64,000 nucleotides of DNA from Octopus sinensis (Eukaryota). Location of the stretch: NCBI RefSeq assembly GCF_006345805.1, contig NC_042999.1, positions 24,490,001-24,554,000 on the forward strand, written 5' to 3'. This document shows, in pieces, positions 3,210 through 44,900 of the stretch (positions are counted from its first letter, which is position 1; each line of letters begins with the position of its first letter). Position numbers and translations under genes: made by a program. Under the pieces are notes generated by a model. That model did not search any database. It was not told the origin of the DNA and was given only the letters and a program-made list of their open reading frames with translations.

Positions 3210-4056
3210 TGTATGCTTCATTTTTTTTTTTTTTTCGGTTGTCATTTCCCATCTCATGTACATTTATTGTGCCGACTGCCAAGAATTCCCCTTCTGGGAT
3301 GTCTACCTGTTGTTGGGCATGTACGTCTTTTTGTCTTCTCTTTTCACTCCTCTTTGGGGCTTGTATTTGTGAGATTTTGTTAATCTACACATTTTTTCTG
3401 GTGGTTGGGGTTTCTGGTCATTGAACTCACGCTCTGCACCACAGTACTGGCATGTTCTCTGCTTGTGGATATGTTTCATCCTATGTCTAGAGATATCTAC
3501 ACTATTGCCCATTGTATTTGCTTGAAAGGTAAGTGAGGCCATTTGTTTTGTAGTAGCTTCAAATGCTCTCGCAATGTTTACTGCTTCTATCAACTGGAGA
3601 GCTTTCTTACCTATGAAGGTTTTTTTAACTTCTTGGTGAGCACCCCACCCCCCACCATATGAGTTGATCAACAATCCTTTTGTCCTTATCTTTGAATCTG
3701 CATTTCTCGGCAACATTCTTTAGAATAGACAGGAAGTTATCAATCGTTTCTTGTGGGTCTTGTTTTATGCCCTGGAATTCGTACCTATGAATTCTGTGGC
3801 TTGATCTGGGCTCTAGGTGTCTTTCAAATTTCCCTAAAAGTGTGTCTGGATTACTGCAATCCGATTCTGACATGTTCCAACTATTGAATAGGTCTAAACC
3901 CTTCTCTCCCGTCCATAAAAGGATGTAGCTTACCTTTTCGTCAGCGGTTGTACCTTTCCGGAAGCTTTTGAAAATCAACTGACTTTTCTGTTTGAATTTC
4001 TCGAACGCTTCCGCGACATCATCAGCGTTCAAGTTCATGGTCGGATGTAGATTCAT
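3210..4056 (-). mobile_element. Ty3/Gypsy-type gag relic (frameshifted, truncated at the zinc knuckle)
   Basis: ORFs 4056-3625 and 3716-3303 give ...EKGLDLFNSW...FERHLEP...QETIDNF...IVDQLIW / AVNIARAFEAT...CQYCG, typical retrotransposon gag. Confidence 0.75.
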
Positions 4057-20505: not shown

Positions 20506-20965
20506 ATGTCACTGTCACGAAACCTTGTTACTGTGATAAATCTGGGTCGCATGGGTTTCTTAGCAGCTGCTGATCTTCAGAAAAGGTACGCCCGAGAGCA
20601 TTTGGATTTCCTTGCTGGCAAACCTGGTGCTATTTCTCGTAATGTTATCCTATTAGTTGAACATGACCCAGTTTACACAACAGGATTTAGGACTAAAACA
20701 TATACCGAAGAGGAAGCCCAGAGATTGAAATCACTTGGTGCCGATTTCTATCGCACCAATCGAGGTGGCATGATTACATTCCATGGTCCAGGCCAACTGG
20801 TGGCTTATCCAATACTTAACCTTTTGCAATTCCGTCCAAGTGTTAAATGGTATGTGAGCAGTTTAGAAGCAACTATAATCAAGACCTGTGCTAACTGGGG
20901 CATAGCTGCCAAGACAACTGTGGATACAGGTGTTTGGGTAGAAGATCGAAAAATAGGAGCAATTG
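20506..20965 (+). CDS. LIPT2: LIPT2 coding exon 1 (exon starts at 20500 after ttttatcAG, so a non-coding exon lies upstream)
   Basis: MSLSRNLVTVINLGRM...DRKIGAI+G, followed by donor GTAAG at 20966. Confidence 0.93.
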
Positions 20966-23900
20966 GTAAGAATTTTATTGACCCTTTTTGAATTATTTAT
21001 GTTGTCACTGTTTTAACATCCATTTTCCCATTATTTGCTAGTTTTGTAGTGTGACATAGTGGAGGCGCAATGGCCCAGTGGTTAGGGCAGCGGACTCGCG
21101 GTCATAGGATCGCGGTTTCAATTCCCAGACCGGGCGTTGTGAGTGTTTATTGAGCGAAAACACCTAAAAGCTCCACAAGGCTCCGGCAGGGGATGGTGGT
21201 GATCCCTGCTGTACTCTTTCACCACAACTTTCTCTCACTCTTACTTCCTGTTTCTGTTGTACCTGTATTTCAAAGGGCCGGCCTTGTCACTCTCTGTGTC
21301 ACGCTGAATATCCCCGAGAACTACGTTAAGGGTACACGTGTCTGTGGAGTGCTCAGCCACTTACACGTTAATTTCACGAGCAGGCTGTTCCGTTGATTCG
21401 GATCAACCGGAACCCTCATTGTCGTAACCGATGGAGTTCTTCCATCCAGTGCGACATAATGTCATTTCTCAATCTTCATTCAAATTTTCTCAGATCTGAT
21501 CCCATTACTTTTTGCTGTCAGTAAGGTGAGGGTTGGCAATGAGTACAATGAAGAATTCCGGATAGAGGTAGGGGTCCACCAAGGATCAGTCCTCAGCCCC
21601 CTCCTATTCATCATAGTCCTCCAGGCAATAACAGAGGAATTCAAGACAGGATGCCCCTGGGAGCTTCTCTATGCTGATGACCTTGCTCTAATAGCTGAGT
21701 CACTATCAGAACAAGGGGAGAAGTTTCAGGTGTGGAAGCAAGGTCTAGAATCGAAGTGCCTTAGAGTCAATCTTGCAAAAACCAAAGTCTTAATATGTAG
21801 CAAGGTAGACAAATCACAAATCCCTTCAGATAGATTGCCATACTTGATCTGTAGAAAAGGCATAGGTAGAAACTCCATTAGATGTACCTGGTGTAAGCTA
21901 TGGATACATAAGAGGTGAAGTAATATCAAAGGAAAGCTAACTGCGAAGAAGCACAGGTTTACTTTTGGTCAGATACTTCTACTGTTGTTTCTCTGAGAAG
22001 ATGGCATCTGTGATACTCTTCCCAGGCTCAAAACCAAACTGCATCTCATCTTGTTTAACTCTATTCCTAATCAAGTGAACTATAACTCTCTGTAACTTGC
22101 ATGACCTGTTCTAACAGTTTAATACAACTGTAGTTGTTTCTGTCTTAGGCATCACCTTTACCCTTGTACCAGCAAACTATAATACTACTACACCAGTCAG
22201 TGGGGATGGTACCTTCCTGAATAACCTGATTAACTATACAAGTTACTAGGCCATATCATACTCAGCCAAATATTTAAACCATCTCCGTAGTGATTCCTGA
22301 CAATACAGGAGGTTTCCCTGTCTTCATATCCTTAATTGCCTTAACTATCATACTACTCTCAACTTTGATGGCTGGTCCCTCAGATGGTTTGATATTTGAA
22401 AGATTCTCCTTCCTCGCATTCTCCACATTTAGCAACCTTTCATAGTGACACTTCTCAGAATCACTAAGTGCAAGCATACCATTATCCATTTGCACATATA
22501 TATATATATATACAGTAAATTTAGGGTGAATACTTGATAAGTGTAAGCACCTATATACGTCAGCTAGTAGCAGAGGTGAGAGGGTATATGTATCAAATGA
22601 AATAAAAAACAGAACACAAATGATGTCGCGGTACACGTGTTTCAAGCTTTATAAATGACCTATTCTTACATCTCTATATATATAAATGGCAGTTTGTCTG
22701 TCTGTGTGGCTGTCAGGTTGTACCTTCACACTGACCACGGCTTTCAACCGATTCTGATGAAACTTGACACACACATAGCCCAATGTCATAATTCAAAACT
22801 AACGCAGCGAAAATTTTGAAAAGTTTCCCCAGTTCTGAAAAAAATCGATAAATTCGACATGGGGTCGAGAATCTAAGCTTTTTATATGCAACACATTTTC
22901 TGTCGGGAGACAGCTAGGAACATCGTATACACAGAAGTATTCGAGTGAAGAGAAGACATTGCAACCTACACATGTGCCTTCGTTCCCTAGAGGGAAAGGA
23001 CTAGATTGGGATTAGTCGTTGCCTACTAGGGGCTCTTACATACCCGGGCAACGCTGCTAGTCAGTGTATAAGAGACATAAAGGATTATTTAAAGCTCTCT
23101 TTGGAATAACAATTGCATGCAGCTGAATAGAGCTTTAAACCATTCTTTATGTCTATTATACACTGATGCAAGAATAGGTCGTTTATAAAGCTTGAAATAC
23201 ATGTACCGCGGCATCCTTTGTGTTCTGTTTTTGATTTCATTTGATATATATATATCTATACATACACACACATTATGTGTTTGTGTATATGCATGTGCCT
23301 ACGTATCAGGAGATTGCATGGATAAGTAAATATAATTACTGTTATCATCCCAATTAAATTCTATAGAACCTTTTTTTGTCTTTACCCCCGATTATTCTGT
23401 TACTTTTCTGTTAACCACCTCTTTTCCTCTTCTCCATTTTTCTCCCTGCCTCCAACATTAACATTATTATTACTCTTTTGATTAGTTTTTTTATTATATT
23501 TACCATGCGCACATAAGCATAAGCTGGTTATTGTAATCACTCATCTTTGTCTGTGTGTTTGCAAAATTACTGGAAAATGGCTGAAAGGATTTTCACCAAA
23601 TTTGGCAGAAATACTCCTTAGGTGAGTGGCTCGAAATGATGAAACTTTAGTTTGCTTATCTTCAAGCATACATAAATACATACATAGATGTGCAACTCTC
23701 TGCGCACGTGTGTGTGTGTGTGTACGTACAGTGATGGATTCAAGGGTTTTGTTTATTTACGAGTTGATTTCTTAATTTCACCAGAGTATAAATACCTATA
23801 ATGGTGAAACACTTCTCAAATTCTATGCAATATTTTCTATAAGTATTTCATTTTGTTCACTTTCTTTTTCATATGAACCACCCCTTGTCTGCATGTGTAT

Positions 23901-26900
23901 AAATCATGGTGTACCTAGGCACATAGACACGTGGGTACATATATGCATACATAGATATGCGACTGTGTGTGTAAAGTGATGGATTCAAGGGCTTCATTTA
24001 TTTGTGAGTTGATTTCTTAATTTCACCATAGTATAAATACCTATAGGGCATGGCTGTGTGGTTAGGGAGCTTGCTTCCTAACTGCATGGTTTCGGGTTCA
24101 GTCCCACTGCGTGGCACTTTGGGGTAGGTGTCTTCCGCTATAGCCCCAAGCCGACCAAAGCTTTGTGATTGAATTCGGTAGGTGGGAGTTACTGCCGTGT
24201 GTGTATGTGTGCGTATAGCTGCTCAGTGCCTCTCCGAAAGAGAGAGAGGGGGGTGATAATTAAAAATAAAAATCTAAAAAGCAGGGGTAAGCAACACATT
24301 ATAATTTGTGAAAAAATTTATCTCTGTGCAGGGTATGCATCGCGCCACCGATTCCTTTTTTTCATTATTATTATTAGTATTACTACTATTATAATTATTA
24401 TTGATGCTGCTATTGGCGATATTATCATCATCATAATGTTATGCTTTGGTTTTGCTTTAATTTACCCAAGTTACACCCAAGTCTCAATCAGAGACATCAA
24501 GAGACAATAAGGTTTTGCATCTGAAGATTCTAACAGGTGAGGTGCCATGCAATTGAAAACACCTATGTCTAGGGGAAAAAACAGACTAAGTAAGGTTCCA
24601 TTTATATAGACAGGAATTTATGTGGAATATGTGAGGCACCCATAAGTATGATCTTTTGTAATTCACTTATTTTGGGGCTGGCAAGGATTTGGTCTACATT
24701 TTAGTTTGCTCCTCTTGATATCATTTCAAGTGCCCCATTAATAATAGCCAATGTTGTTTTGAGATGCCATCATCATCATCATCATCATCATTGTTTAACG
24801 TCCGCTTTCCATACTGGCATGGGTTGGACGGTTCAACTGGGGTCTGGGAAGCCAGAAGGCTGCACCAGGCCCAGTCTAATCTGGCAGTGTTTCTACAGCT
24901 GGATGCCCTTCCTAATGCCAACCACTCCGTGAGTGTAGTGGGTGCTTTTTACATGCCACCGGCACAGGTGCCAGACGAGGCTGGCAAACGGCCTTGATCG
25001 GATGGTGCTTTTTACGTGCCACCGGCACGGGGACCAGACGAAGCTGGCAACGGCTACGGTCGGATGGTGCTTTTTACATGCCACCGGCACAGAGGCCAGT
25101 CGGGCGGCGCTGGCTACGGCCATGTTCGGATGGTTCTCTTACGTGCCACCGGCACTGGTATCACAGCTACAAATTCCATTGATGTTGATGGATTACGATT
25201 TTGATTTTCACTTGCCTCAACAGGTCTTCACTTCTGATTTCAGTTTCCAGTTGCAACATCAATCAGAAGACAAGTCTTTTCAGTATGATTAACAATGAGG
25301 TCATGTTGACTTTCCTGTACTTTCCAATCAGTCTGAACACTGAACTTTCAAAGGATTGTAACCTTGGCATTCTGGGAAAGTTGTGGTAACTTGTTGTTTT
25401 TGTGGGAGAGGTTGTATGTGTGGTATATTGATCAGTGTATGCACTGAGCTGCCCTGTCATGCCTTTGCAAGTATTGTTGGTGCTCCTCTGCTTCGTCCAG
25501 AAATTATGTGGTTGGTGCTAAGAGCACCATCTGAGCGCGATCGTTGCCAGAGCGGCTAACTGGCTTCCGTGCTGGTGGCATGCAGGAGGCACCATTCGAG
25601 CGGGATTGTTACCAGCATCGCCTTACTGGCACCTGTGCTGTTGGCATGTGTAAAAAATTCGAGTGAGGTCATTGCCAGTACCACCTGTCTGGCCCAAAAA
25701 ATTCAAGCGTGGTCGTTGCCAGTACCGCCTGACTGGCCCCTGTGCAGGTAGCACGTAAAAAGCACCCACTACACTCTCGGAGTGGTTGGCATTAGGAAGG
25801 GCATTCAACTGTAGAAACTCTGCCAGATCAAGACTGGAGCTTGGTGCAGCCATCTGGTTTGCCAGCCCACAGTCAAACCGTCCAACCCATGCTAGCATGG
25901 AAAATGGACGTTAAACGACGATGATGGTGATGATGGTGATGACGATTGTCTCTGGATGTTCTCTGTATATGCATAATGATGAGCTGCTTTTATATTTCAA
26001 GGGACTGGTCCTGAGCAGCAGTGATATCTCCCTCAATTTCTGGTTTGAGACCAGAGCATAACAGCCACTGATGATTAAGGACTTGATCTACATTGGGTCC
26101 CTGATTCCAATCTGATCACTGCTAATAAGGGCGGTGAGCTGGCAGAAACATTAGCACACCAGGCGAAATGCGTAGCTGTATTTCGTCTGCTGTTACGTTC
26201 TGAGTTCAAATTCCGCCAAAGTCGACTTTGCCTTTCATCCTTTCGGGGTCGATAAATTAAGTACCAGTTACGCACTGGGGTCGATGTAATCGACTTAATC
26301 CGTTTGTCTGTCCTTGTTTGTCCCCTCTGTGTTTAGCCCCTTGTGGGTAATAAAGAAATTTTTTTAAAGAATGTTCAAGACTGTATACTACCAATCCCAT
26401 TCACTACTAAAACTCTTTACACTCTGACACTGGTTCATTTCCTCCCCCATCCTCTCCCCGAACTTATGTCCTTCTCAATTCTCTATTCCTTGTCCTTTTC
26501 TACAGATTTTGTATGTAAACACACAGATACAACAACCATCCCATTTCTTGTCAATACTATTCACTTGCACATTTCCTTTTCTTCTCTCTCTCTCTGTTTC
26601 AATCTCCTTTCTTTCTCCCTCTCTACACATAGTCATCCTCGTAACTTGGTAGTCCACTTATTACTCTGACAATATATATTGAAATATTTCTCCATCAACT
26701 GGTTTATATTTTGAAATGTTTTAACTTGCATAATGGATTTCTTATATATTTATGCTAACCTCAAATGTACATATCAAAATGATTTCAAAATATCACTATT
26801 TGATTTGACTTCATTACTACAACTTATATGCATGCATGTATATATATATATATCGAGGCGCAATGGCCCAGTGGTTAGGGCAGCGGACTTGCTGTCGTAG

Positions 26901-27665
26901 GATCGCGGTTTCGATTCCCAGACTGGGCATTGTGAGTGTTTATTGAGTGAAAACACCTAAAGCTTCACAAGGCTCCTGCAGGGGGTGGTGGTGAACCCTG
27001 CTGTACTCTTTCACCACAACTTTCTCTCACTCTTTCTTCCTGTTTCTGTTGTACCTGTATTTCAAAGGGCCAGCCTTGTCACTCTCTGTGTCACGCTGAA
27101 TATCCCCGAGAACTACGTTAAGGGTGCACATGTCTGTGGAGTGCTCAGCCACTTACACGTTAATTTCACGAGCAAGCTGTTCCGTTGATCGTATCAGCTG
27201 GGACCCTCGTCGTCGTAACCGATGGAGTGCTCCTATATACTATATATATCATATTTACAAGCTAGTAACTCACTCTTTTACTTGTTTCAGGCATTTGACT
27301 GCGGCCATGCTGGAGCACCGCCTTTAATCGAGCAACTCGACCCCGGGACTTATTCTTTTGTAAGCCCAGTACTTATTTTATCGGCCTCTTTTGCCGAACC
27401 GCTAAGTAACGTAAACACACTAGCATCGGTTGTCAAGCGATGTTGGAGGGACAAACACAGACACACACATACATATATACATATATACGACAGGCTTCTT
27501 TCAGTTTCCGTCTACCAAATCCACTCACAAGGCTTTGGTCGGCCCTAGGCTATAGTAGAAGACACTTGCCCAAGGTGCCACGCAGTGGGACTGAACCCGG
27601 AACCATGTGGTTGGTAAACAAGCTACTTACTGTTTAATTTTTTTCGTGTATGTTGTCTGCATCCC

Positions 27666-27716
<51 letters not shown>

Positions 27717-28188
27717 CCACACCCACACACCCATGCTATAAACTAAAATTTGTTTTTTATTTTTATTCATTTCAGGAATTCATACTCGCCGTTATGTTAC
27801 AACACACGGAATCTCTTTGAATTGTAATCCAGAGCTGTCTTGGTTTAAATTCATTGTTCCTTGTGAACTAAAAGGAAAATCAGTTACATCCATATCAAAA
27901 GAAACAAATAGAGAAGTCTCCATCAAAGACGTGACAAAATCGTTTTTGGAAAGTTTCTCAGAAGTATTTAACTGTAGCATTGAAACGTCGATGCTTGAGC
28001 AGCACGAACACATATTCATTCCTCATCAAACCACATTTTCCAGCCAAAATGCATCAGCAACTACAACCCCAACTCCAGCAACTTCTACAGAATTTGCTAG
28101 CAAAACTATAGTTCCACCTGAGACTCTCTACCGTTTACCATCTAAAGAGAAAGAAACTCCTGTAGACAGACAAATACCAATGTGGTGA
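20506..28188 (+). CDS. LIPT2: Lipoyltransferase 2 / octanoyl-ACP:protein N-octanoyltransferase (LipB family); join(20506..20965,27776..28188), 873 nt, 290 aa
   Basis: Spliced translation has LipB motifs EHDPVYTTG, RGGMITFHGPGQLVAYP, RKIGAIG, THGISLN, IVPC. Phase-1 GT-AG intron 20966-27775 joins G+GA=Gly and the frame runs to TGA at 28186-28188. Confidence 0.95.
21060..21445 (+). mobile_element. SINE family 3 (tRNA-derived head)
   Basis: tggcccagtggttagg A box, ggtttcaattccc B box; approximate TSD agtg(t/c)gacata. Confidence 0.88.
21515..21950 (+). mobile_element. RTE-clade LINE reverse transcriptase fragment
   Basis: GVHQGSVLSPLLF...LLYADDL...LRVNLAKTKV. Confidence 0.85.
22270..22480 (-). 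mobile_element. RTE-clade LINE fragment (pre-RT linker)
   Basis: YERLLNVEN...IVKAIKDMKTGK...GITTEM. Confidence 0.6.
22671..23060 (+). mobile_element. Non-autonomous Helitron-like element
   Basis: a|TCtctatatat...cccggg...CTAG|t: 5' TC, 3' CTAG, short GC palindrome, inserted between A and T. Confidence 0.6.
24047..24195 (+). mobile_element. SINE family 1, head only
   Basis: tggctgtgtggttagg...ggttcagtcccactgcgtggcac. Confidence 0.7.
24767..25200 (-). mobile_element. SINE family 4
   Basis: Reverse complement of 18789-19196, (ATC)n on left. Confidence 0.82.
25530..25945 (+). mobile_element. SINE family 4
   Basis: Same core and gatgatg tail. Confidence 0.75.
26130..26360 (+). mobile_element. 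SINE family 2
   Basis: ggcggtgagctggcagaaac...ccccttgtgggtaataaagaaat. Confidence 0.85.
26853..27232 (+). mobile_element. SINE family 3
   Basis: High identity to 21060-21445. Confidence 0.85.
27271..27631 (-). mobile_element. SINE family 1
   Basis: Reverse complement of 11489-11903. Confidence 0.85.
27668..27732. repeat. (CT)n(CA)n microsatellite just upstream of the LIPT2 exon 2 acceptor
   Basis: Direct reading. Confidence 0.92.
27776..28188 (+). CDS. LIPT2: LIPT2 coding exon 2 (last)
   Basis: Polypyrimidine tract + tttcAG at 27775; (G)IHTRRYVTTHGISLNCNPELSWFKFIVPCE...QIPMW*. Confidence 0.92.
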
Positions 28189-28484
28189 GCATCAAATGGT
28201 ATGGAGTTTGGTATTGGAGAGAATTGTACATATATATTCCTTTAATTTTGTCTTGCACCACTCAGTTTTCAATTTATTTACAGTGTTTTAAAAAAGGGTA
28301 TTTTTTGTATATTTTATTTTTACATTATTATTTTTCCTAATACAGAACTATAAAATGCAAAATGTACAAAAACAATGAGTAATAATAAAAAAAAAAGGTA
28401 AAAACATACCATGAAAGATAGTTTTGTTCTGCAATTTAATTAATATTGATTTGTTGACTAAATACAATATTGAGGTATAAATAT

Positions 28485-28832
28485 CATGAGGCCAGCGCTG
28501 CCTCAACTGGCTCCAGTGCCGGTGGCACATAAAAAGCACCATCCGAATGTGGCCGATGCCAGCGCTGCCTTGGCTGGCTTCCGTGCCGGTGGCACGTTAA
28601 AAGCACCAACCGATCATGGCTGATGCCGGACTCCCCTGGCACCTGTGCAGGTGGCACGTAAAAAGCACCCACTACACTCGCGGAGTGGTTGGCGTTAGGA
28701 AGGGCATCAAGCTGTAGAAACTCTGCCAGATCAGACTGGAGCCTGGTGCAGCCCCTGGCTTCCCAGACCCCGGTCGAACCGTCCAACCCGTGCTAGCATG
28801 GGAAACGAACGTTAAACGATGATGATGATGAT
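28485..28832 (+). mobile_element. SINE family 4
   Basis: Same core and gatgatgat tail. Confidence 0.8.
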
Positions 28833-29289
28833 GTTTAGCTCTAGTATATTATTGATACGTTTTGACTTTTATCTACTTCAAAGTGATATAAAACAAAAGT
28901 CAACCTCAGAAATTTTTGAATGCAGATTGTACAGAGATATGAATAAAAGACCCTCTATTTTAGTTCATCTGATACACCTGTATAATCTTCCCAACTGCTA
29001 TAATATCCCTTATAATTTAACCCTTTAGCATTTAAACCGGCCATATCTGGCCAAAAGTATTCTGCTTGTTTTATGTTCAAACTGGCCATATCTGGTCTCT
29101 TAAACCAACCCTACCATATCGTTTGAAAAATTAACAGCTACCTCATCAAAATCTCAAAGCTACAAGATAATGCAGGATTAGTTCAAAACAATGTGGATGA
29201 AAAAGGATTAATTTTGGTAGAATAATGCGAACACTAAAGGGTTAATGTCTGTCACATGTATTAGGGCCAGTCACCAGCTTCATATTACC

Positions 29290-29536: not shown

Positions 29537-29715
29537 ATATATATATATATATATACGACGGGCTTCTTTCAGTTTCCGTCTACCAAATCCATTCACAAGG
29601 CTTTGGTCGGCCCGAGGCTATAGAAGACACTTGCCCAAGGTGCCACGCAGTGGGACTGAACCCGGAACCATGTGGTTGGTAAACAAGCTACTTACCACAC
29701 AGCCACTCCTGCGCC
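29290..29715 (-). mobile_element. SINE family 1, full length
   Basis: Ends ...cacagccactcctgcgcc. Confidence 0.88.
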
Positions 29716-29997: not shown

Positions 29998-30520
29998 TTA
30001 CTGCAATTTTTTTTGTTTCAGTCCCTCAACCACATTTGAACCTTCAACTGAACCAGTTATATTTCCACTCAAAACACTTATGGGCATATCTTTCTTCTTC
30101 TTCTTACAGCATTCACCCAGGGGGGTTGAACTGGCTTCATTTATCCTCAATGCTGCATCTCTCACAAACGCCGACCAGGCCTGGCGATTTGAGGCTAACG
30201 ACCGCGTGATCTCCAACCACTCCTTATTCCAACAGCGAACACCATAGATATGGGGGCCTAGGTTGGGTTCCAGATCAGCCTTGACCGTCATCAGCCAGGT
30301 TTTTCTTTGTCCACCACATCGCTTTCGCCAACCCTGAAAGGGAGCTGGGACAATTGCTTCGTAGATGAATTCTCCTGGTTGACGACGGAGGGCGTGACCC
30401 AGCCAACGCAGACGTCTCGTTAGGATGACTTGTCGGAGGGAGGTGATTCTGCACTGGTGTCGTACCGAATTGTTGGAGACAAAGTGGGCATATTCCACAG
30501 CTTGAATAGTTCCATCCACT
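29998..30520 (-). mobile_element. RTE-like LINE C-terminal fragment
   Basis: RRLRWLGHALRR...GGQRKTW...DL...ASNRQAW. Confidence 0.75.
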
Positions 30521-41960: not shown

Positions 41961-44900
41961 CATCACTATATGTGTTTACGTCCCTGTCACTTAGCAGTTC
42001 GGCAAAAAGAGACCGATAGAATAAGTACTGGGCTTACAAAGAATAAGTCCCAGGGTCGAGTTGCTCGATTTAAGGTGGTGCTCCAGCATGGCTGCAGTCA
42101 AATGACTGAAACAAGTAAAAGAGTAAAAGAGTATATACACATACACACATGAGCTACAGATGTTTAGCTGGAGGCATTGCTGCAAATTTATATACAAGAC
42201 TATTGTTGTCATATCGGTTATGTAGTGTGTGTTGTGCCACAGAAAATAACCAAATCATACGGTGTTGGATTGCACAAGAAAAACAACAATAACATGGCAG
42301 CATCTCACATTCCCAAAATGCAGTGGCACTCAGAAGACAATACAGCCGAAGCCCTGCAAATGTTCAAACAAAGCATCATGTACTATTGTGAAGAGGAGGA
42401 AATTACAAAACCCCGGAAAATAGCCTTGAAAATATTAAGAGGCATTGGAAATGAAGGATTCAAATGTCTGAATGCATCTAGCTTATCAAAGGCTGACAAG
42501 AAAAACCCAATAAACTGTGGGAATTGTTCAAAGCACAAGTCAAGACAAACCTCAGTTTCAGAGTACATCACCTTAAACTGATAGCATGTAGCCAGCAACA
42601 AAGCGGCGAGCTGGCAGAAACATTAGCACGCCGGGCGAAATGCTTAGCAGTATTTCGTCTGCGTTACGTTGTGAGTTCGAATTCCACCGAGGTCGACTTT
42701 GCCTTTCATCCTTTCGGGGGTCGATAAATTAAGTACCAGTTATGCACTGGGGTTGATGTAATCGACTTAATACCTATATCTGTCCTTGTTTGTCCCCTCT
42801 GTGTTTAGCCCCTTGTGGGTAATAAAGAAATAAGTATGTAGCCAACAACATGATAGAAACAATTACCTGTGGGTGGCCAGACAACATCAAATAAGTTCCA
42901 GATGATATAAGGACATACTGGTCTTTTCGAGATGAACTGGCTTAGAAGATGGAATTATCTTAAAGGGACACAAGTGTTGATACATCCTCCTATACAACAT
43001 GACATTCTAGTACAGCTCCATGCCTTTCATCAAGGGATAGAAAAGAACAAACTTCACGCTCATGAACGCATCTATTGGACAAACATTGACAAAGACAGCG
43101 AAGAAGTGTGCAGATCTTGTCAAATATGCTAGAAATTTGCAGCTGCCAATAACAAAGAGCCACTGATACCTCACAACATTCTCAGTGCACTATGGAAAAA
43201 ACTGGGAGCAGATCTATTTGAAATCAATGGCAAAACTTATCTGTTCATTTGTGACTAATTCACCAAATTTCTGACTGTGACTTATCTCAGTCAGACTACA
43301 AACAAAGCAGTCACAGAGAAATTCTAAGAGACAGTATCCCACTTCAGCAAACCTGATGAAATTTTCAGCAACAACAGTCCTCAGGTTTGTGTTCTGTACT
43401 GTTTCTTGTTTATTGGTGCGGACGACATATGCTGGCAAGCATGTTCGCTGTGTTTTTTTTCTTTCGGGGTCACCAATTGTAACAGGATGAGAGTTCAGGA
43501 ACACTGGAGGGGTGTCCGATCTGATCTTGTCACATACAAGTTGAAGAAACGGAACCAAAGTCAGGCTGTCTTCAATAACAAAAATAGTAGTTTATTCTGC
43601 AGTTCACAGGTAAAACATATCCATATGTATTTCTTGTGGGGAAACCGGCAGCCAAGTCCACAGGACTGTTTACAATGTTCACTCATGTGAGCCAAGAAGA
43701 TACGGTGTTCGCTGAGAGAAGTCGAGTCACGTCCGATCGCTAGCGCTGCTCTGCCAGAAAGACCGATTCAGTGGTCATGTTTTCAGGTTGCAGTTCCTGC
43801 ACATGCGCATGAGGAAACTTCGGTGGCCAACCAGAAGTAATCCAATTCTGCGCATGTGTGCTGAAATTTACACAGTAGCGTTACTACATACTGGAAAACC
43901 ATTTCAACAATTCACACAGAAATGGAAAATTTAAAACACTACATCGTCACCAAGGTACCCCCACTCAACCAGGTTCATAGAGAAACAAGTACAGACAATC
44001 AAAAAGACAATCCAAAAATGTGAACAAAGCAAAGAAGATGTACACAATGCATTGTTGAATCTAAGAGCCACACCATTAAACTCAAAGATGCCGTCACCCA
44101 CTGAGATCCTATTGAGCAGGCCAATCACAACACTTATGGGATTACACTGGAGCTACTCTCATGAAACTCAAAAACAGAGAAAACTTCTTGAAGAGAAGAA
44201 AATACAAATGAAAACTGCATATGACCAGCATGCAAAGATGGAATTACCTCCATTGCACAAAGGACAAGCTGAAAAAGTTCTAGACAAAAACAACAAATGT
44301 TGGATACCTGGAGAAGTAGCAACAGAATGTAAAGGATGGAGTTCTTACATTGTGAAAACAATACATGGAGATTTGCGAAGAAACAGAAGGGAACTGAAAG
44401 ATACTGACACAGGCATCGACAGACAGTATGAACAGACCATTCAGGTGGAAATGCACGTCAGATTGCCCAACAATATAGAGACAGACAACCATCCAACAGA
44501 CCCTACAAACTCCATGGAACAGGTTACAGACCTTACAAACTCCATGGAACATGTTACTCAACTTGACTGAAGGAAAAAAATCACAAATTCTCCTCCTGAT
44601 GACAATGCAGAAACACAAAATAACAGCCAGAAGTATGAAAAGTGCTCAACACCCAAAAGAACCACAAGTGAAGTGCCCAGTGACAGTGTTAAAAAGTTAT
44701 TTGGACAAGATTCCACACAGCTTCCACCAACAAGATTTCCCTCAAAAGCTGAGGCTAAGGTAGAAAACACTTAGCCAGAGATCCATACAATGTGATGAAC
44801 CTGATACCACATAGTGGTGAGGTGATCTCAGCCATAATCTACTCAATCAAAGTTGATCTAGAGTTAAACAATAACAAAATATAATAAATGTTTAAACTTA

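What the first reader, a model, noticed from the sequence alone, without database searches (positions are those of the whole stretch)
27859..27867. LIPT2 catalytic PCG motif is genomically PCE, one A-to-I edit away from the conserved Gly
Seen: codons cct tgt gaa (27859-27867) give P-C-E while the other LipB motifs are intact. Known: LipB/LIPT2 use a Lys/Cys dyad with the Cys in a highly conserved PCG; A-to-I editing reads A as G; coleoid cephalopods recode extensively. Inference: editing A27866 converts GAA to GGA (Gly), a candidate restorative or switch-like recoding site beside the catalytic Cys. Caveat: a 5' G neighbour is disfavoured by ADARs, so this may just be a tolerated substitution or a sequencing error.
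Basis: partly seen in the sequence, partly recalled or inferred. Interest (0 to 1): 0.7.

Follow-up and report, generated by a model that had tools for sequence, protein, structure and literature searches.

The report
Octopus LIPT2 carries Pro-Cys-Glu, not Pro-Cys-Gly
Octopuses and the paper nautilus encode a glutamate where almost every other organism has a glycine next to the catalytic cysteine of the lipoic-acid enzyme LIPT2; it looks like an old, fixed and tolerated substitution, and nothing found here suggests RNA editing has to repair it.

Summary
Window 27859-27867 reads CCT TGT GAA (Pro182-Cys183-Glu184) in exon 2 of a two-exon LIPT2/LipB gene (20506-20965 and 27776-28188, + strand). 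The protein is identical to Octopus vulgaris/O. sinensis LIPT2. Gly at this position is near-invariant: 114 of 120 close homologues and 129 of 135 diverse representatives.

The Glu is not a sequencing error. The O. bimaculoides and Argonauta hians genomes carry the same TGT GAA. Cuttlefish (Sepia, in both transcripts and a genomic contig) and a second decapodiform encode Gly (GGT, GGA). So this is a G-to-A change fixed in octopods after they split from squids and cuttlefish.

The gene is under strong purifying selection: dN/dS is 0.083 for Octopus versus Argonauta and 0.084 within decapodiforms. All other catalytic motifs are intact.

Editing A27866 would restore the ancestral Gly, but nothing supports that it happens. 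The −1 base is G and the +1 base is A. There is no stable local fold (z −0.45) and no complementary partner. The flanks are not conserved between Octopus species. The accessible part of one published site list shows only a 1.5% synonymous LIPT2 site.

An otherwise intact Littorina LIPT2 has Asp here, and an oyster carries a rare Glu allele. The most likely reading is a hard-wired, tolerated substitution. RNA reads were not available, so editing is not excluded.

The parts
20506..20965 (+). LIPT2 exon 1 (codons 1-153 plus the first base of codon 154). Includes HDPVYTTG, RGGMITFHGPGQ (from 20761) and the catalytic Lys149 codon AAA at 20950-20952.
   Evidence: The ORF and the GT donor at 20966-20967 were read directly. 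The spliced product is identical to P0122, O. vulgaris/O. sinensis LIPT2. K149 is invariant in 58 homologues and aligns to Lys142 of 1W66.
20966..27775 (+). Intron 1 (6.8 kb, phase 1). It is full of repeats: a reverse-transcriptase fragment, SINE-like copies and (CT)n/(CA)n microsatellites just upstream of the acceptor.
   Evidence: GT...AG boundaries; RVT_1 hit at 21526-21918; inverted repeats; sequence read.
27776..28188 (+). LIPT2 exon 2 (rest of codon 154 to codon 290, plus stop). It covers the C-terminal part of the LplA-B catalytic domain and a roughly 65-residue tail predicted to be disordered.
   Evidence: Pfam PF21948, E 2.8e-8; PDB LipB matches; AlphaFold model with pLDDT below 50 for residues 230-282.
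27859..27867 (+). CCT TGT GAA = Pro182-Cys183-Glu184. Cys183 is the acyl-thioester nucleophile. Glu184 replaces the near-invariant Gly, and A27866 is the middle base of its codon.
   Evidence: The same codons occur in O. bimaculoides and Argonauta hians. Sepia has TGT GGT and the second decapodiform TGT GGA.

Best explanation
This is the Octopus vulgaris/sinensis orthologue of LIPT2, the mitochondrial LipB-type octanoyl-[ACP]:protein N-octanoyltransferase. It moves octanoate from ACP onto the lipoyl-lysine of the glycine-cleavage H protein through a Cys183 thioester, assisted by Lys149.

The Glu after the catalytic Cys is a hard-wired, lineage-specific substitution. A single GGA-to-GAA transition became fixed on the octopod branch, after the split from squids and cuttlefish and before Octopus and Argonauta diverged. 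The Glu184 enzyme is itself functional, because the gene has stayed under strong purifying selection ever since. RNA editing is not needed to restore Gly.

Shown here: gene identity, the codon in three genomes, the ancestral Gly, the level of constraint, and the poor ADAR context. Inferred: that the Glu184 enzyme is active, and that the change is neutral or mildly compensated rather than repaired at the RNA level.
For: - Identity: the spliced product is identical to P0122. It matches Pfam PF21948 and LipB structures 1W66 and 2QHS by sequence, E 5e-32 and 5e-31. By fold, target-normalised TM is 0.82 and 0.88.
- Fixation: TGT GAA is present in the window, in O. bimaculoides and in Argonauta hians. 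These represent two families of Incirrata.
- Ancestral Gly: Sepia has GGT in eight transcripts and in a two-exon genomic contig, L011. A second decapodiform has GGA. All other molluscs listed have Gly, except Littorina, which has Asp.
- Constraint: dN/dS for Octopus versus Argonauta is 0.083 at dS 0.76, equal to 0.084 between the two decapodiforms. Octopods keep 79 of the 85 columns that are at least 85% conserved, including K149 and C183.
- Tolerance elsewhere: Littorina saxatilis LIPT2 has PCD with its RGG, HGPGQ and Lys motifs intact. A Crassostrea-like oyster carries PCE on two contigs with different backgrounds, against more than 200 contigs with PCG.
- Editing context: −1 G and +1 A; fold z −0.45; weakest duplex partner among 41 CDS segments. 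The predicted intron partner (27761-27779) carries two indels and two substitutions in or beside it in O. bimaculoides. Flank divergence is 7.8-9.9% against 5.8% for the exon.
- Established knowledge plus inference: lipoylation is needed in every tissue, while heavy coleoid editing is concentrated in neural tissue. A neural edit could therefore not rescue an inactive enzyme elsewhere in the body.
Against: - No RNA reads could be examined, so editing at A27866 was not measured.
- Gly at this column is 96-97% conserved across LipB/LIPT2. A free ride for Glu is therefore surprising, and the activity of the Glu184 enzyme is untested.
- A G-to-A change at a conserved nonsynonymous site in a coleoid is exactly the pattern the harm-permitting model predicts (PMC6881472).
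- Third-codon-position identity between Octopus and Argonauta is somewhat high around the site, 0.87 for codons 171-185. One other window (codons 81-95) is equally high.
- Long inverted repeats flank exon 2 and could recruit ADAR to the pre-mRNA.
Confidence: 0.75

Rival explanations
1. Restorative (harm-permitting) or switch-like A-to-I editing. ADAR converts A27866 to inosine in a meaningful share of transcripts, so that Gly184 enzyme is produced. This either allowed the G-to-A mutation to fix or now tunes LIPT2 activity.
For: - GAA to GGA restores the inferred ancestral residue.
- The host is a coleoid.
- LIPT2 mRNA is edited at one or more other sites in O. bimaculoides: LIPT2-906, synonymous, 1.49%, more than 400 reads.
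- In octopus, 2.3-3.4% of potential restorative sites are detectably edited (Fig. 2B data).
- Inverted repeats of 116 nt at 91% complementarity bracket exon 2.
Against: - The −1 base is G, which ADARs disfavour (established knowledge). The +1 base is A, whereas G or T accompanies high editing.
- There is no stable structure (z −0.45) and no complementary partner.
- The predicted weak intron pairing is not conserved in O. bimaculoides, and the flanks are not unusually conserved.
- No restorative LIPT2 site appears in the stored part of the Jiang and Zhang list or in five other supplements searched. All of these lists are incomplete as held.
- The median level of restorative editing is below 2.5%, too low to matter for a housekeeping enzyme.
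- Neural-biased editing cannot rescue other tissues.
Confidence: 0.1
2. Adaptive remodelling of the active site. Glu184 was selected because it changes catalysis, for example the pKa of Cys183, deprotonation of the acceptor lysine, or partner recognition. Other octopod-specific changes would accompany it.
For: - Glu184 has persisted across octopods under strong constraint.
- Octopods share further changes at well-conserved columns: L89M inside the RGGL motif, E71A, D173E and H179F. They also have Ser189 where decapodiforms have Glu.
- The non-Gly residues that occur beside an intact Cys in other taxa are all polar or acidic: D, E and N.
Against: - There is no test of positive selection and no structural coordinates.
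- The AlphaFold model places residues 182-184 in a short helical turn rather than in a hairpin opposite residue 189. A simple charge swap is therefore not supported.
- A single fixed change is equally well explained by drift.
Confidence: 0.1
3. Degenerating or inactive copy. The Glu cripples the enzyme, and the gene is a pseudo-enzyme or is on its way out.
For: - Glu replaces a 96-97% conserved Gly next to the nucleophile.
- Some land-snail LIPT2 paralogues really have lost the Cys: PPS in Bradybaena and PPN in Candidula.
Against: - dN/dS is 0.083, the same as in lineages with PCG.
- Cys, Lys, RGG and HGPGQ are all kept.
- The reading frame and splice sites are intact in three genomes.
- No second octopus LIPT2 appears among the 120 best homologues that could take over the function.
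Confidence: 0.04
4. Sequencing or assembly error in the window.
For: None beyond the rarity of the residue.
Against: The same codon is found in independent assemblies of O. bimaculoides (GCA_001194135.2) and Argonauta hians (GCA_054771915.1). The protein is identical in the O. vulgaris and O. sinensis annotations.
Confidence: 0.01

Closest known systems
LipB / LIPT2 octanoyl-[ACP]:protein N-octanoyltransferases (M. tuberculosis LipB 1W66, T. thermophilus LipB 2QHS, E. coli LipB, human LIPT2)
   Same: - Same fold: target-normalised TM 0.82-0.88.
- Same Pfam domain, PF21948.
- Same Cys/Lys dyad, C183 and K149, aligned to Cys176 and Lys142 of 1W66. PMC9307952 describes the dyad and the thioester mechanism.
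- Same RGG and HGPGQ motifs.
   Different: - The residue after the catalytic Cys is Glu instead of the near-invariant Gly.
- Leu becomes Met in the RGGL motif.
- A cephalopod-specific C-terminal tail of about 65 residues is predicted to be disordered and ends in PMW.
Decapodiform cephalopod LIPT2 (Sepia cluster P0005; second cluster P0004)
   Same: - 67-68% identical over the full length.
- Same two-exon structure with the same phase-1 intron position after KI(G/A)AIG.
- Same C-terminal tail.
   Different: They encode PCG (GGT or GGA) in both genome and transcripts. They also have Glu189 where octopods have Ser.
Restorative / harm-permitting A-to-I recoding sites of coleoids (Jiang and Zhang 2019, PMC6881472)
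   Same: The site is a genomic A at a nonsynonymous position whose A-to-G change would recreate the ancestral amino acid. It sits at a position conserved in the outgroups.
   Different: No editing has been shown here. Both neighbouring bases are unfavourable, no dsRNA partner was found, and the flanks are not conserved.
Other natural non-Gly variants at this position (Littorina saxatilis LIPT2 with PCD; rare PCE allele in a Crassostrea-like oyster)
   Same: An acidic residue follows an intact catalytic Cys in an otherwise intact LIPT2. Each is one G-to-A transition away from a Gly codon.
   Different: These taxa are not known for heavy recoding. The oyster variant is a minority allele, and the Littorina case rests on a single annotated genome. 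Only in octopods is the change shown to be fixed across genera.

Membership tests
LipB/LIPT2 octanoyltransferase | LplA/LipB catalytic domain (Pfam PF21948) | tested here: met
   Exon 2 alone scores E 2.8e-8, 34.4 bits, against a cut-off of 27. All full-length homologues carry PF21948.
LipB/LIPT2 octanoyltransferase | Fold of solved LipB structures | tested here: met
   The AlphaFold model has mean pLDDT 81, and 94-98 over most of the domain. Its best PDB matches are 2QHS (E 2e-21, TMt 0.88) and 1W66 (E 8e-20, TMt 0.82), ahead of the LplA and BirA enzymes.
LipB/LIPT2 octanoyltransferase | Catalytic Cys (E. coli C169 / M. tuberculosis C176) | tested here: met
   Cys183 (TGT, 27862-27864) aligns to Cys176 of 1W66. 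The column is invariant in 58 homologues.
LipB/LIPT2 octanoyltransferase | Catalytic Lys (E. coli K135 / M. tuberculosis K142) | tested here: met
   Lys149 (AAA, 20950-20952) in DRKIGAIG aligns to RKVAAIG of 1W66. The column is invariant.
LipB/LIPT2 octanoyltransferase | RGG...HGPGQ substrate-arm binding motif | tested here: met
   RGGMITFHGPGQ starts at 20761. R86, G87, G88, H93, G94, G96 and Q97 are invariant.
LipB/LIPT2 octanoyltransferase | Gly immediately after the catalytic Cys (P-C-G) | tested here: not met
   The residue is Glu184. Gly occupies this column in 114 of 120 and 129 of 135 homologues. It is a strongly conserved feature rather than a proven catalytic residue, so orthology stands and the protein is a motif variant.
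LipB/LIPT2 octanoyltransferase | Octanoyl transfer activity | not testable with these tools
   This needs complementation or an enzyme assay. Purifying selection (dN/dS 0.083) is only indirect support.
Coleoid A-to-I recoding site (restorative class) | Genomic A read as G in a fraction of transcripts | not testable with these tools
   No octopus RNA reads or transcript assemblies were reachable. The Octopus protein cluster holds only genome-derived entries.
Coleoid A-to-I recoding site (restorative class) | The edited codon recreates an ancestral amino acid | tested here: met
   GAA to GGA gives Gly. Gly is encoded in Sepia, in the second decapodiform and in nearly all other molluscs.
Coleoid A-to-I recoding site (restorative class) | ADAR-compatible neighbours (−1 not G; +1 G or T for strong sites) | tested here: not met
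   The context is G-A-A. The motif description is in PMC7703385; the dislike of a 5' G is established ADAR knowledge.
Coleoid A-to-I recoding site (restorative class) | Site embedded in a stable double-stranded RNA structure | tested here: not met
   The 201-nt fold has z −0.45. The best duplex partner, −21.9 kcal/mol, is the weakest of 41 CDS segments. These are predictions only.
Coleoid A-to-I recoding site (restorative class) | Reduced sequence divergence around the site between related species | tested here: not met
   Divergence between O. vulgaris and O. bimaculoides is 7.8-9.9% within ±25-50 nt, against 5.8% for the exon 2 coding sequence.
Coleoid A-to-I recoding site (restorative class) | Listed in published editomes | tested here: inconclusive
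   Only LIPT2-906 (synonymous, 1.49%, O. bimaculoides) appears in the stored, truncated source data of PMC6881472. Five other supplements gave no hit. The primary table of Liscovitch-Brauer 2017 is not held.

The most novel reading that the evidence does not exclude
A27866 is edited at an appreciable and regulated level, by tissue or temperature. Octopods would then make two LIPT2 isoforms, Glu184 and Gly184, with different activity. That would put protein lipoylation, and through it flux through pyruvate and 2-oxoglutarate dehydrogenase and glycine cleavage, under RNA-editing control. It would also be a clean, assayable example of harm-permitting editing beside a catalytic nucleophile.
Probability: 0.05. 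Interest if true: 0.65.

Novelty: new variant of a known kind. Interest (0 to 1): 0.25.

Why it matters
The gene itself is an ordinary, already annotated LIPT2 orthologue. What is new is small. The Gly after the LipB catalytic Cys is treated as invariant, yet a whole animal order has replaced it with Glu while the gene stays under normal constraint.

That tells enzymologists the Gly is not strictly required, and it provides a natural variant to test. For the debate on cephalopod RNA editing, the site is a well-defined candidate: a conserved G changed to A in a coleoid, in an enzyme with a simple bacterial complementation assay. One read pile-up plus one assay would show whether the substitution is harm-permitted or simply tolerated. 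The present evidence points to simply tolerated, so the expected pay-off is modest.

Tried and rejected
- A protein search with the exon-2 peptide alone returned only 4 candidates and one hit. The word index serves short queries poorly. The full-length query worked.
- I looked for RNA-level evidence. The Octopus protein cluster contains only genome-derived NCBI entries and no transcript assemblies. Exact look-ups for two O. bimaculoides isoforms found nothing; a third isoform gave the genomic locus.
- Supplements of six editing papers were searched for LIPT2, LIPB and lipoyltransferase. Only the truncated Jiang and Zhang source data had an entry, and it was a different, synonymous site. Liscovitch-Brauer 2017 is not held. 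A literature search for LIPT2 plus cephalopod gave no papers.
- I considered a compensatory charge swap across a beta-hairpin: Gly184/Glu189 in decapodiforms versus Glu184/Ser189 in octopods. The model puts residues 182-184 in a short helical turn rather than a strand, and Littorina has acidic residues at both positions. I dropped the idea.
- The predicted pairing of the site with the intron polypyrimidine tract is weak, AT-rich, no better than shuffled sequence and not conserved in O. bimaculoides. I rejected it as an editing structure.
- The sequencing-error and pseudogene readings were rejected.
- ARAGORN found no tRNA genes in the window, although tRNA-like SINE sequence is visible.
- I did not use the third homologue search, the second structure job, or the metagenome and bacterial-genome scans. 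None of them can reach octopus RNA.

Full report
**What is at the coordinates**

Window 27859-27867 reads CCT TGT GAA, which is Pro-Cys-Glu. The codons lie in the second exon of a two-exon gene on the + strand. Exon 1 runs 20506-20965 and is followed by a GTAAGA donor. Exon 2 runs 27776-28188 and is preceded by a TTTCAG acceptor. The spliced 290-residue product is identical to the protein annotated as 'putative lipoyltransferase 2, mitochondrial' in Octopus vulgaris and O. sinensis (P0122). The window is therefore Octopus genomic DNA.

**Gene identity**

- The protein carries the LplA/LipB catalytic domain (PF21948).
- By sequence it matches the solved LipB structures 1W66 and 2QHS at E 5e-32 and 5e-31.
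- An AlphaFold model is confident over most of the domain, with 10-residue block means mostly 94-98 and a few dips to 81-88. It superposes best on those two structures, with target-normalised TM of 0.82 and 0.88, ahead of LplA and biotin ligases.
- Lys149 (DRKIGAIG) and Cys183 align to the Lys142/Cys176 dyad of M. tuberculosis LipB. PMC9307952 describes the mechanism, an octanoyl thioester on the Cys.
- The RGG...HGPGQ motif is intact.

**How unusual the Glu is**

- Among the 120 closest homologues the column is Gly in 114.
- Among 150 representatives of 50%-identity clusters it is Gly in 129 of the 135 that have a residue there. Most exceptions are truncated proteins or proteins that have also lost the Cys.
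- Of 85 columns conserved at 85% or more, octopods differ at six. G184E is the change at the best-conserved of those six.

**It is not an error, and it is old**

The same TGT GAA is found in the O. bimaculoides chromosome assembly and in the Argonauta hians genome. Argonauta belongs to a different family of incirrate octopods.

The nearest non-octopod sequences are two cephalopod clusters at 67-68% identity. They share the gene's peculiar C-terminal tail ending in PMW.
- One cluster is Sepia: run SRR19578105 is cited only in Sepia esculenta transcriptome papers. It has TGT GGT in eight transcript contigs and in a two-exon genomic contig, L011.
- The other cluster has TGT GGA.

Gly is therefore ancestral. 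A single G-to-A transition was fixed on the octopod branch after the split from decapodiforms, which PMC6881472 dates at about 275 Mya, and before Octopus and Argonauta diverged (dS 0.76).

**Is the gene still working?**

Nei-Gojobori dN/dS between Octopus and Argonauta is 0.083, or 0.072 for the catalytic domain alone. That is indistinguishable from 0.084 between the two PCG-bearing decapodiforms. The reading frame, the splice sites and 79 of 85 conserved columns are retained. No second octopus LIPT2 appears among the best 120 homologues. The gene behaves like a functional housekeeping enzyme, not a decaying copy.

**Does RNA editing restore the Gly?**

The codon arithmetic is right, and the site fits the definition of a potential restorative site (PMC6881472). 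No RNA reads could be reached with these tools, so the question cannot be settled directly. The indirect evidence is unfavourable:

1. The neighbours are G at −1 and A at +1. ADARs disfavour a 5' G (established knowledge), and in coleoids G or T at +1 accompanies higher editing levels (PMC7703385).
2. The 201-nt region folds no better than shuffled sequence (z −0.45).
   - The only predicted pairing of the site is an interrupted AT-rich helix with the intron's polypyrimidine tract.
   - That tract (27761-27779) carries two indels and two substitutions in or beside it in O. bimaculoides.
3. Across the pre-mRNA, the 41-nt segment centred on the site has the weakest best duplex partner (−21.9 kcal/mol) of the 41 CDS segments compared. 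The others range from −22.4 to −41.8.
4. Divergence between O. vulgaris and O. bimaculoides within ±25-50 nt of the site is 7.8-9.9%, not lower than the exon's 5.8%. Conserved coleoid editing sites usually show reduced flank divergence.
5. In the stored (truncated) source data of Jiang and Zhang the only LIPT2 entry is position 906 in O. bimaculoides, synonymous, 1.49%, with more than 400 reads. This shows the transcript was well covered. It does not prove the PCE codon is unedited, because the file is cut.
6. Base rates are low. Only 2.3-3.4% of potential restorative sites in the two octopuses are detectably edited, at median levels below 2.5%.
7. Lipoylation is needed in all tissues, whereas heavy coleoid editing is largely neural (established knowledge). 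An inactive Glu184 enzyme could not be rescued body-wide.

**Tolerance in other taxa**

- Littorina saxatilis LIPT2 has Pro-Cys-Asp with all other motifs intact.
- A Crassostrea-like oyster (90% identical to C. gigas LIPT2) shows Pro-Cys-Glu on two contigs with different sequence backgrounds. More than 200 contigs of the same 90% cluster have Pro-Cys-Gly.
- One metagenomic eukaryote-like sequence has Pro-Cys-Asn.

They do show that a polar or acidic side chain can follow the catalytic Cys in otherwise intact enzymes.

**Verdict**

The best-supported reading is a hard-wired, octopod-wide Gly-to-Glu substitution in a functional LIPT2 (confidence about 0.75). It is either neutral or mildly adaptive.

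| Reading | Confidence |
|---|---|
| Meaningful restorative or switch-like editing | about 0.1 |
| Adaptive active-site remodelling | about 0.1 |
| Inactive or degenerating copy | about 0.04 |
| Sequencing or assembly error | refuted |

The decisive tests are a DNA/RNA read pile-up at 27866 across tissues, and complementation of an E. coli K-12 lipB lplA deletion strain with the Glu184 and Gly184 versions.

**Context noted**

- Intron 1 (6.8 kb) and the downstream flank are rich in repeats.
- SINE-like copies in opposite orientation bracket exon 2. The pairs are 24871-24986 with 28624-28739 (116 nt, 91% complementary) and 24063-24181 with 27512-27629.
- These could form long intramolecular duplexes in the pre-mRNA. 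They would be expected ADAR targets themselves, but they do not include the PCE codon.

Noticed in passing
window 24768-25140, 25559-25941, 28500-28833; also 24063-24181 vs 27512-27629 and 29580-29694: Families of SINE-like repeats lie in opposite orientation within LIPT2 intron 1 and just downstream of the stop codon. The best pair is 24871-24986 with 28624-28739 (116 nt, 91% complementary). They bracket exon 2 and could form long dsRNA in the pre-mRNA. That would be a likely hyper-editing substrate and possibly an ADAR-recruiting element. It is unclear whether the downstream arm lies in the 3' UTR, because an AATAAA-like signal sits near 28385.
   Followed up: partly
window 21526-21918 (+), inside LIPT2 intron 1: An ORF fragment with a reverse-transcriptase domain (RVT_1, E 3e-12), from a retroelement remnant in the intron. 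Other long ORFs at 3303-4056 (−), 29998-30519 (−), 42177-42581 (+) and 44052-44570 (+) had no Pfam hit.
   Followed up: partly
window 27665-27735: A (CT)n run is followed by (CA)n/CACCC repeats about 40-110 nt upstream of the exon 2 acceptor. This stretch and the SINE before it do not align to O. bimaculoides; the alignment starts at 27724.
   Followed up: no
window 27990-28185 (LIPT2 residues ~226-290): Cephalopod LIPT2 has a C-terminal extension of about 65 residues that bacterial LipB and most animal LIPT2 lack. It is predicted to be disordered (pLDDT below 50 for residues 230-282). It keeps conserved islands (HEHIFIPH and the terminal PMW) from Octopus to Sepia. Its function is unknown.
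   Followed up: partly
L001 nt 2059-2082 (Logan SRR14864984) and proteins P0001/P0159 vs P0146/P0147: A Crassostrea-like oyster (90% identical to C. gigas LIPT2) carries a minority Pro-Cys-Glu allele (TGT GAA) on two contigs with different backgrounds. The common allele is Pro-Cys-Gly. This is an independent recurrence of the same G-to-A change.
   Followed up: partly
P0025 (Littorina saxatilis XP_070173287): This LIPT2 has Pro-Cys-Asp at the same position, with the RGG, HGPGQ and Lys motifs intact. It is another natural acidic replacement of the 'invariant' Gly, in a gastropod.
   Followed up: partly
P0049 (Bradybaena similaris), P0064/P0342 (Candidula unifasciata), P0222: Some gastropod LIPT2-like proteins have lost the catalytic Cys (PPS, PPN, SSQ) and the RGG and Lys motifs. 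In Bradybaena this is a second copy alongside a normal LIPT2 (P0034). They look like degenerate or repurposed paralogues.
   Followed up: no
window 20770-20772 (Met89) and other octopod-specific changes: Octopods also share L89M directly after the RGG motif (Leu in 98% of homologues), plus E71A, D173E and H179F. All cephalopods have lost His179 (91% conserved elsewhere); octopods have Phe there and decapodiforms Leu.
   Followed up: no
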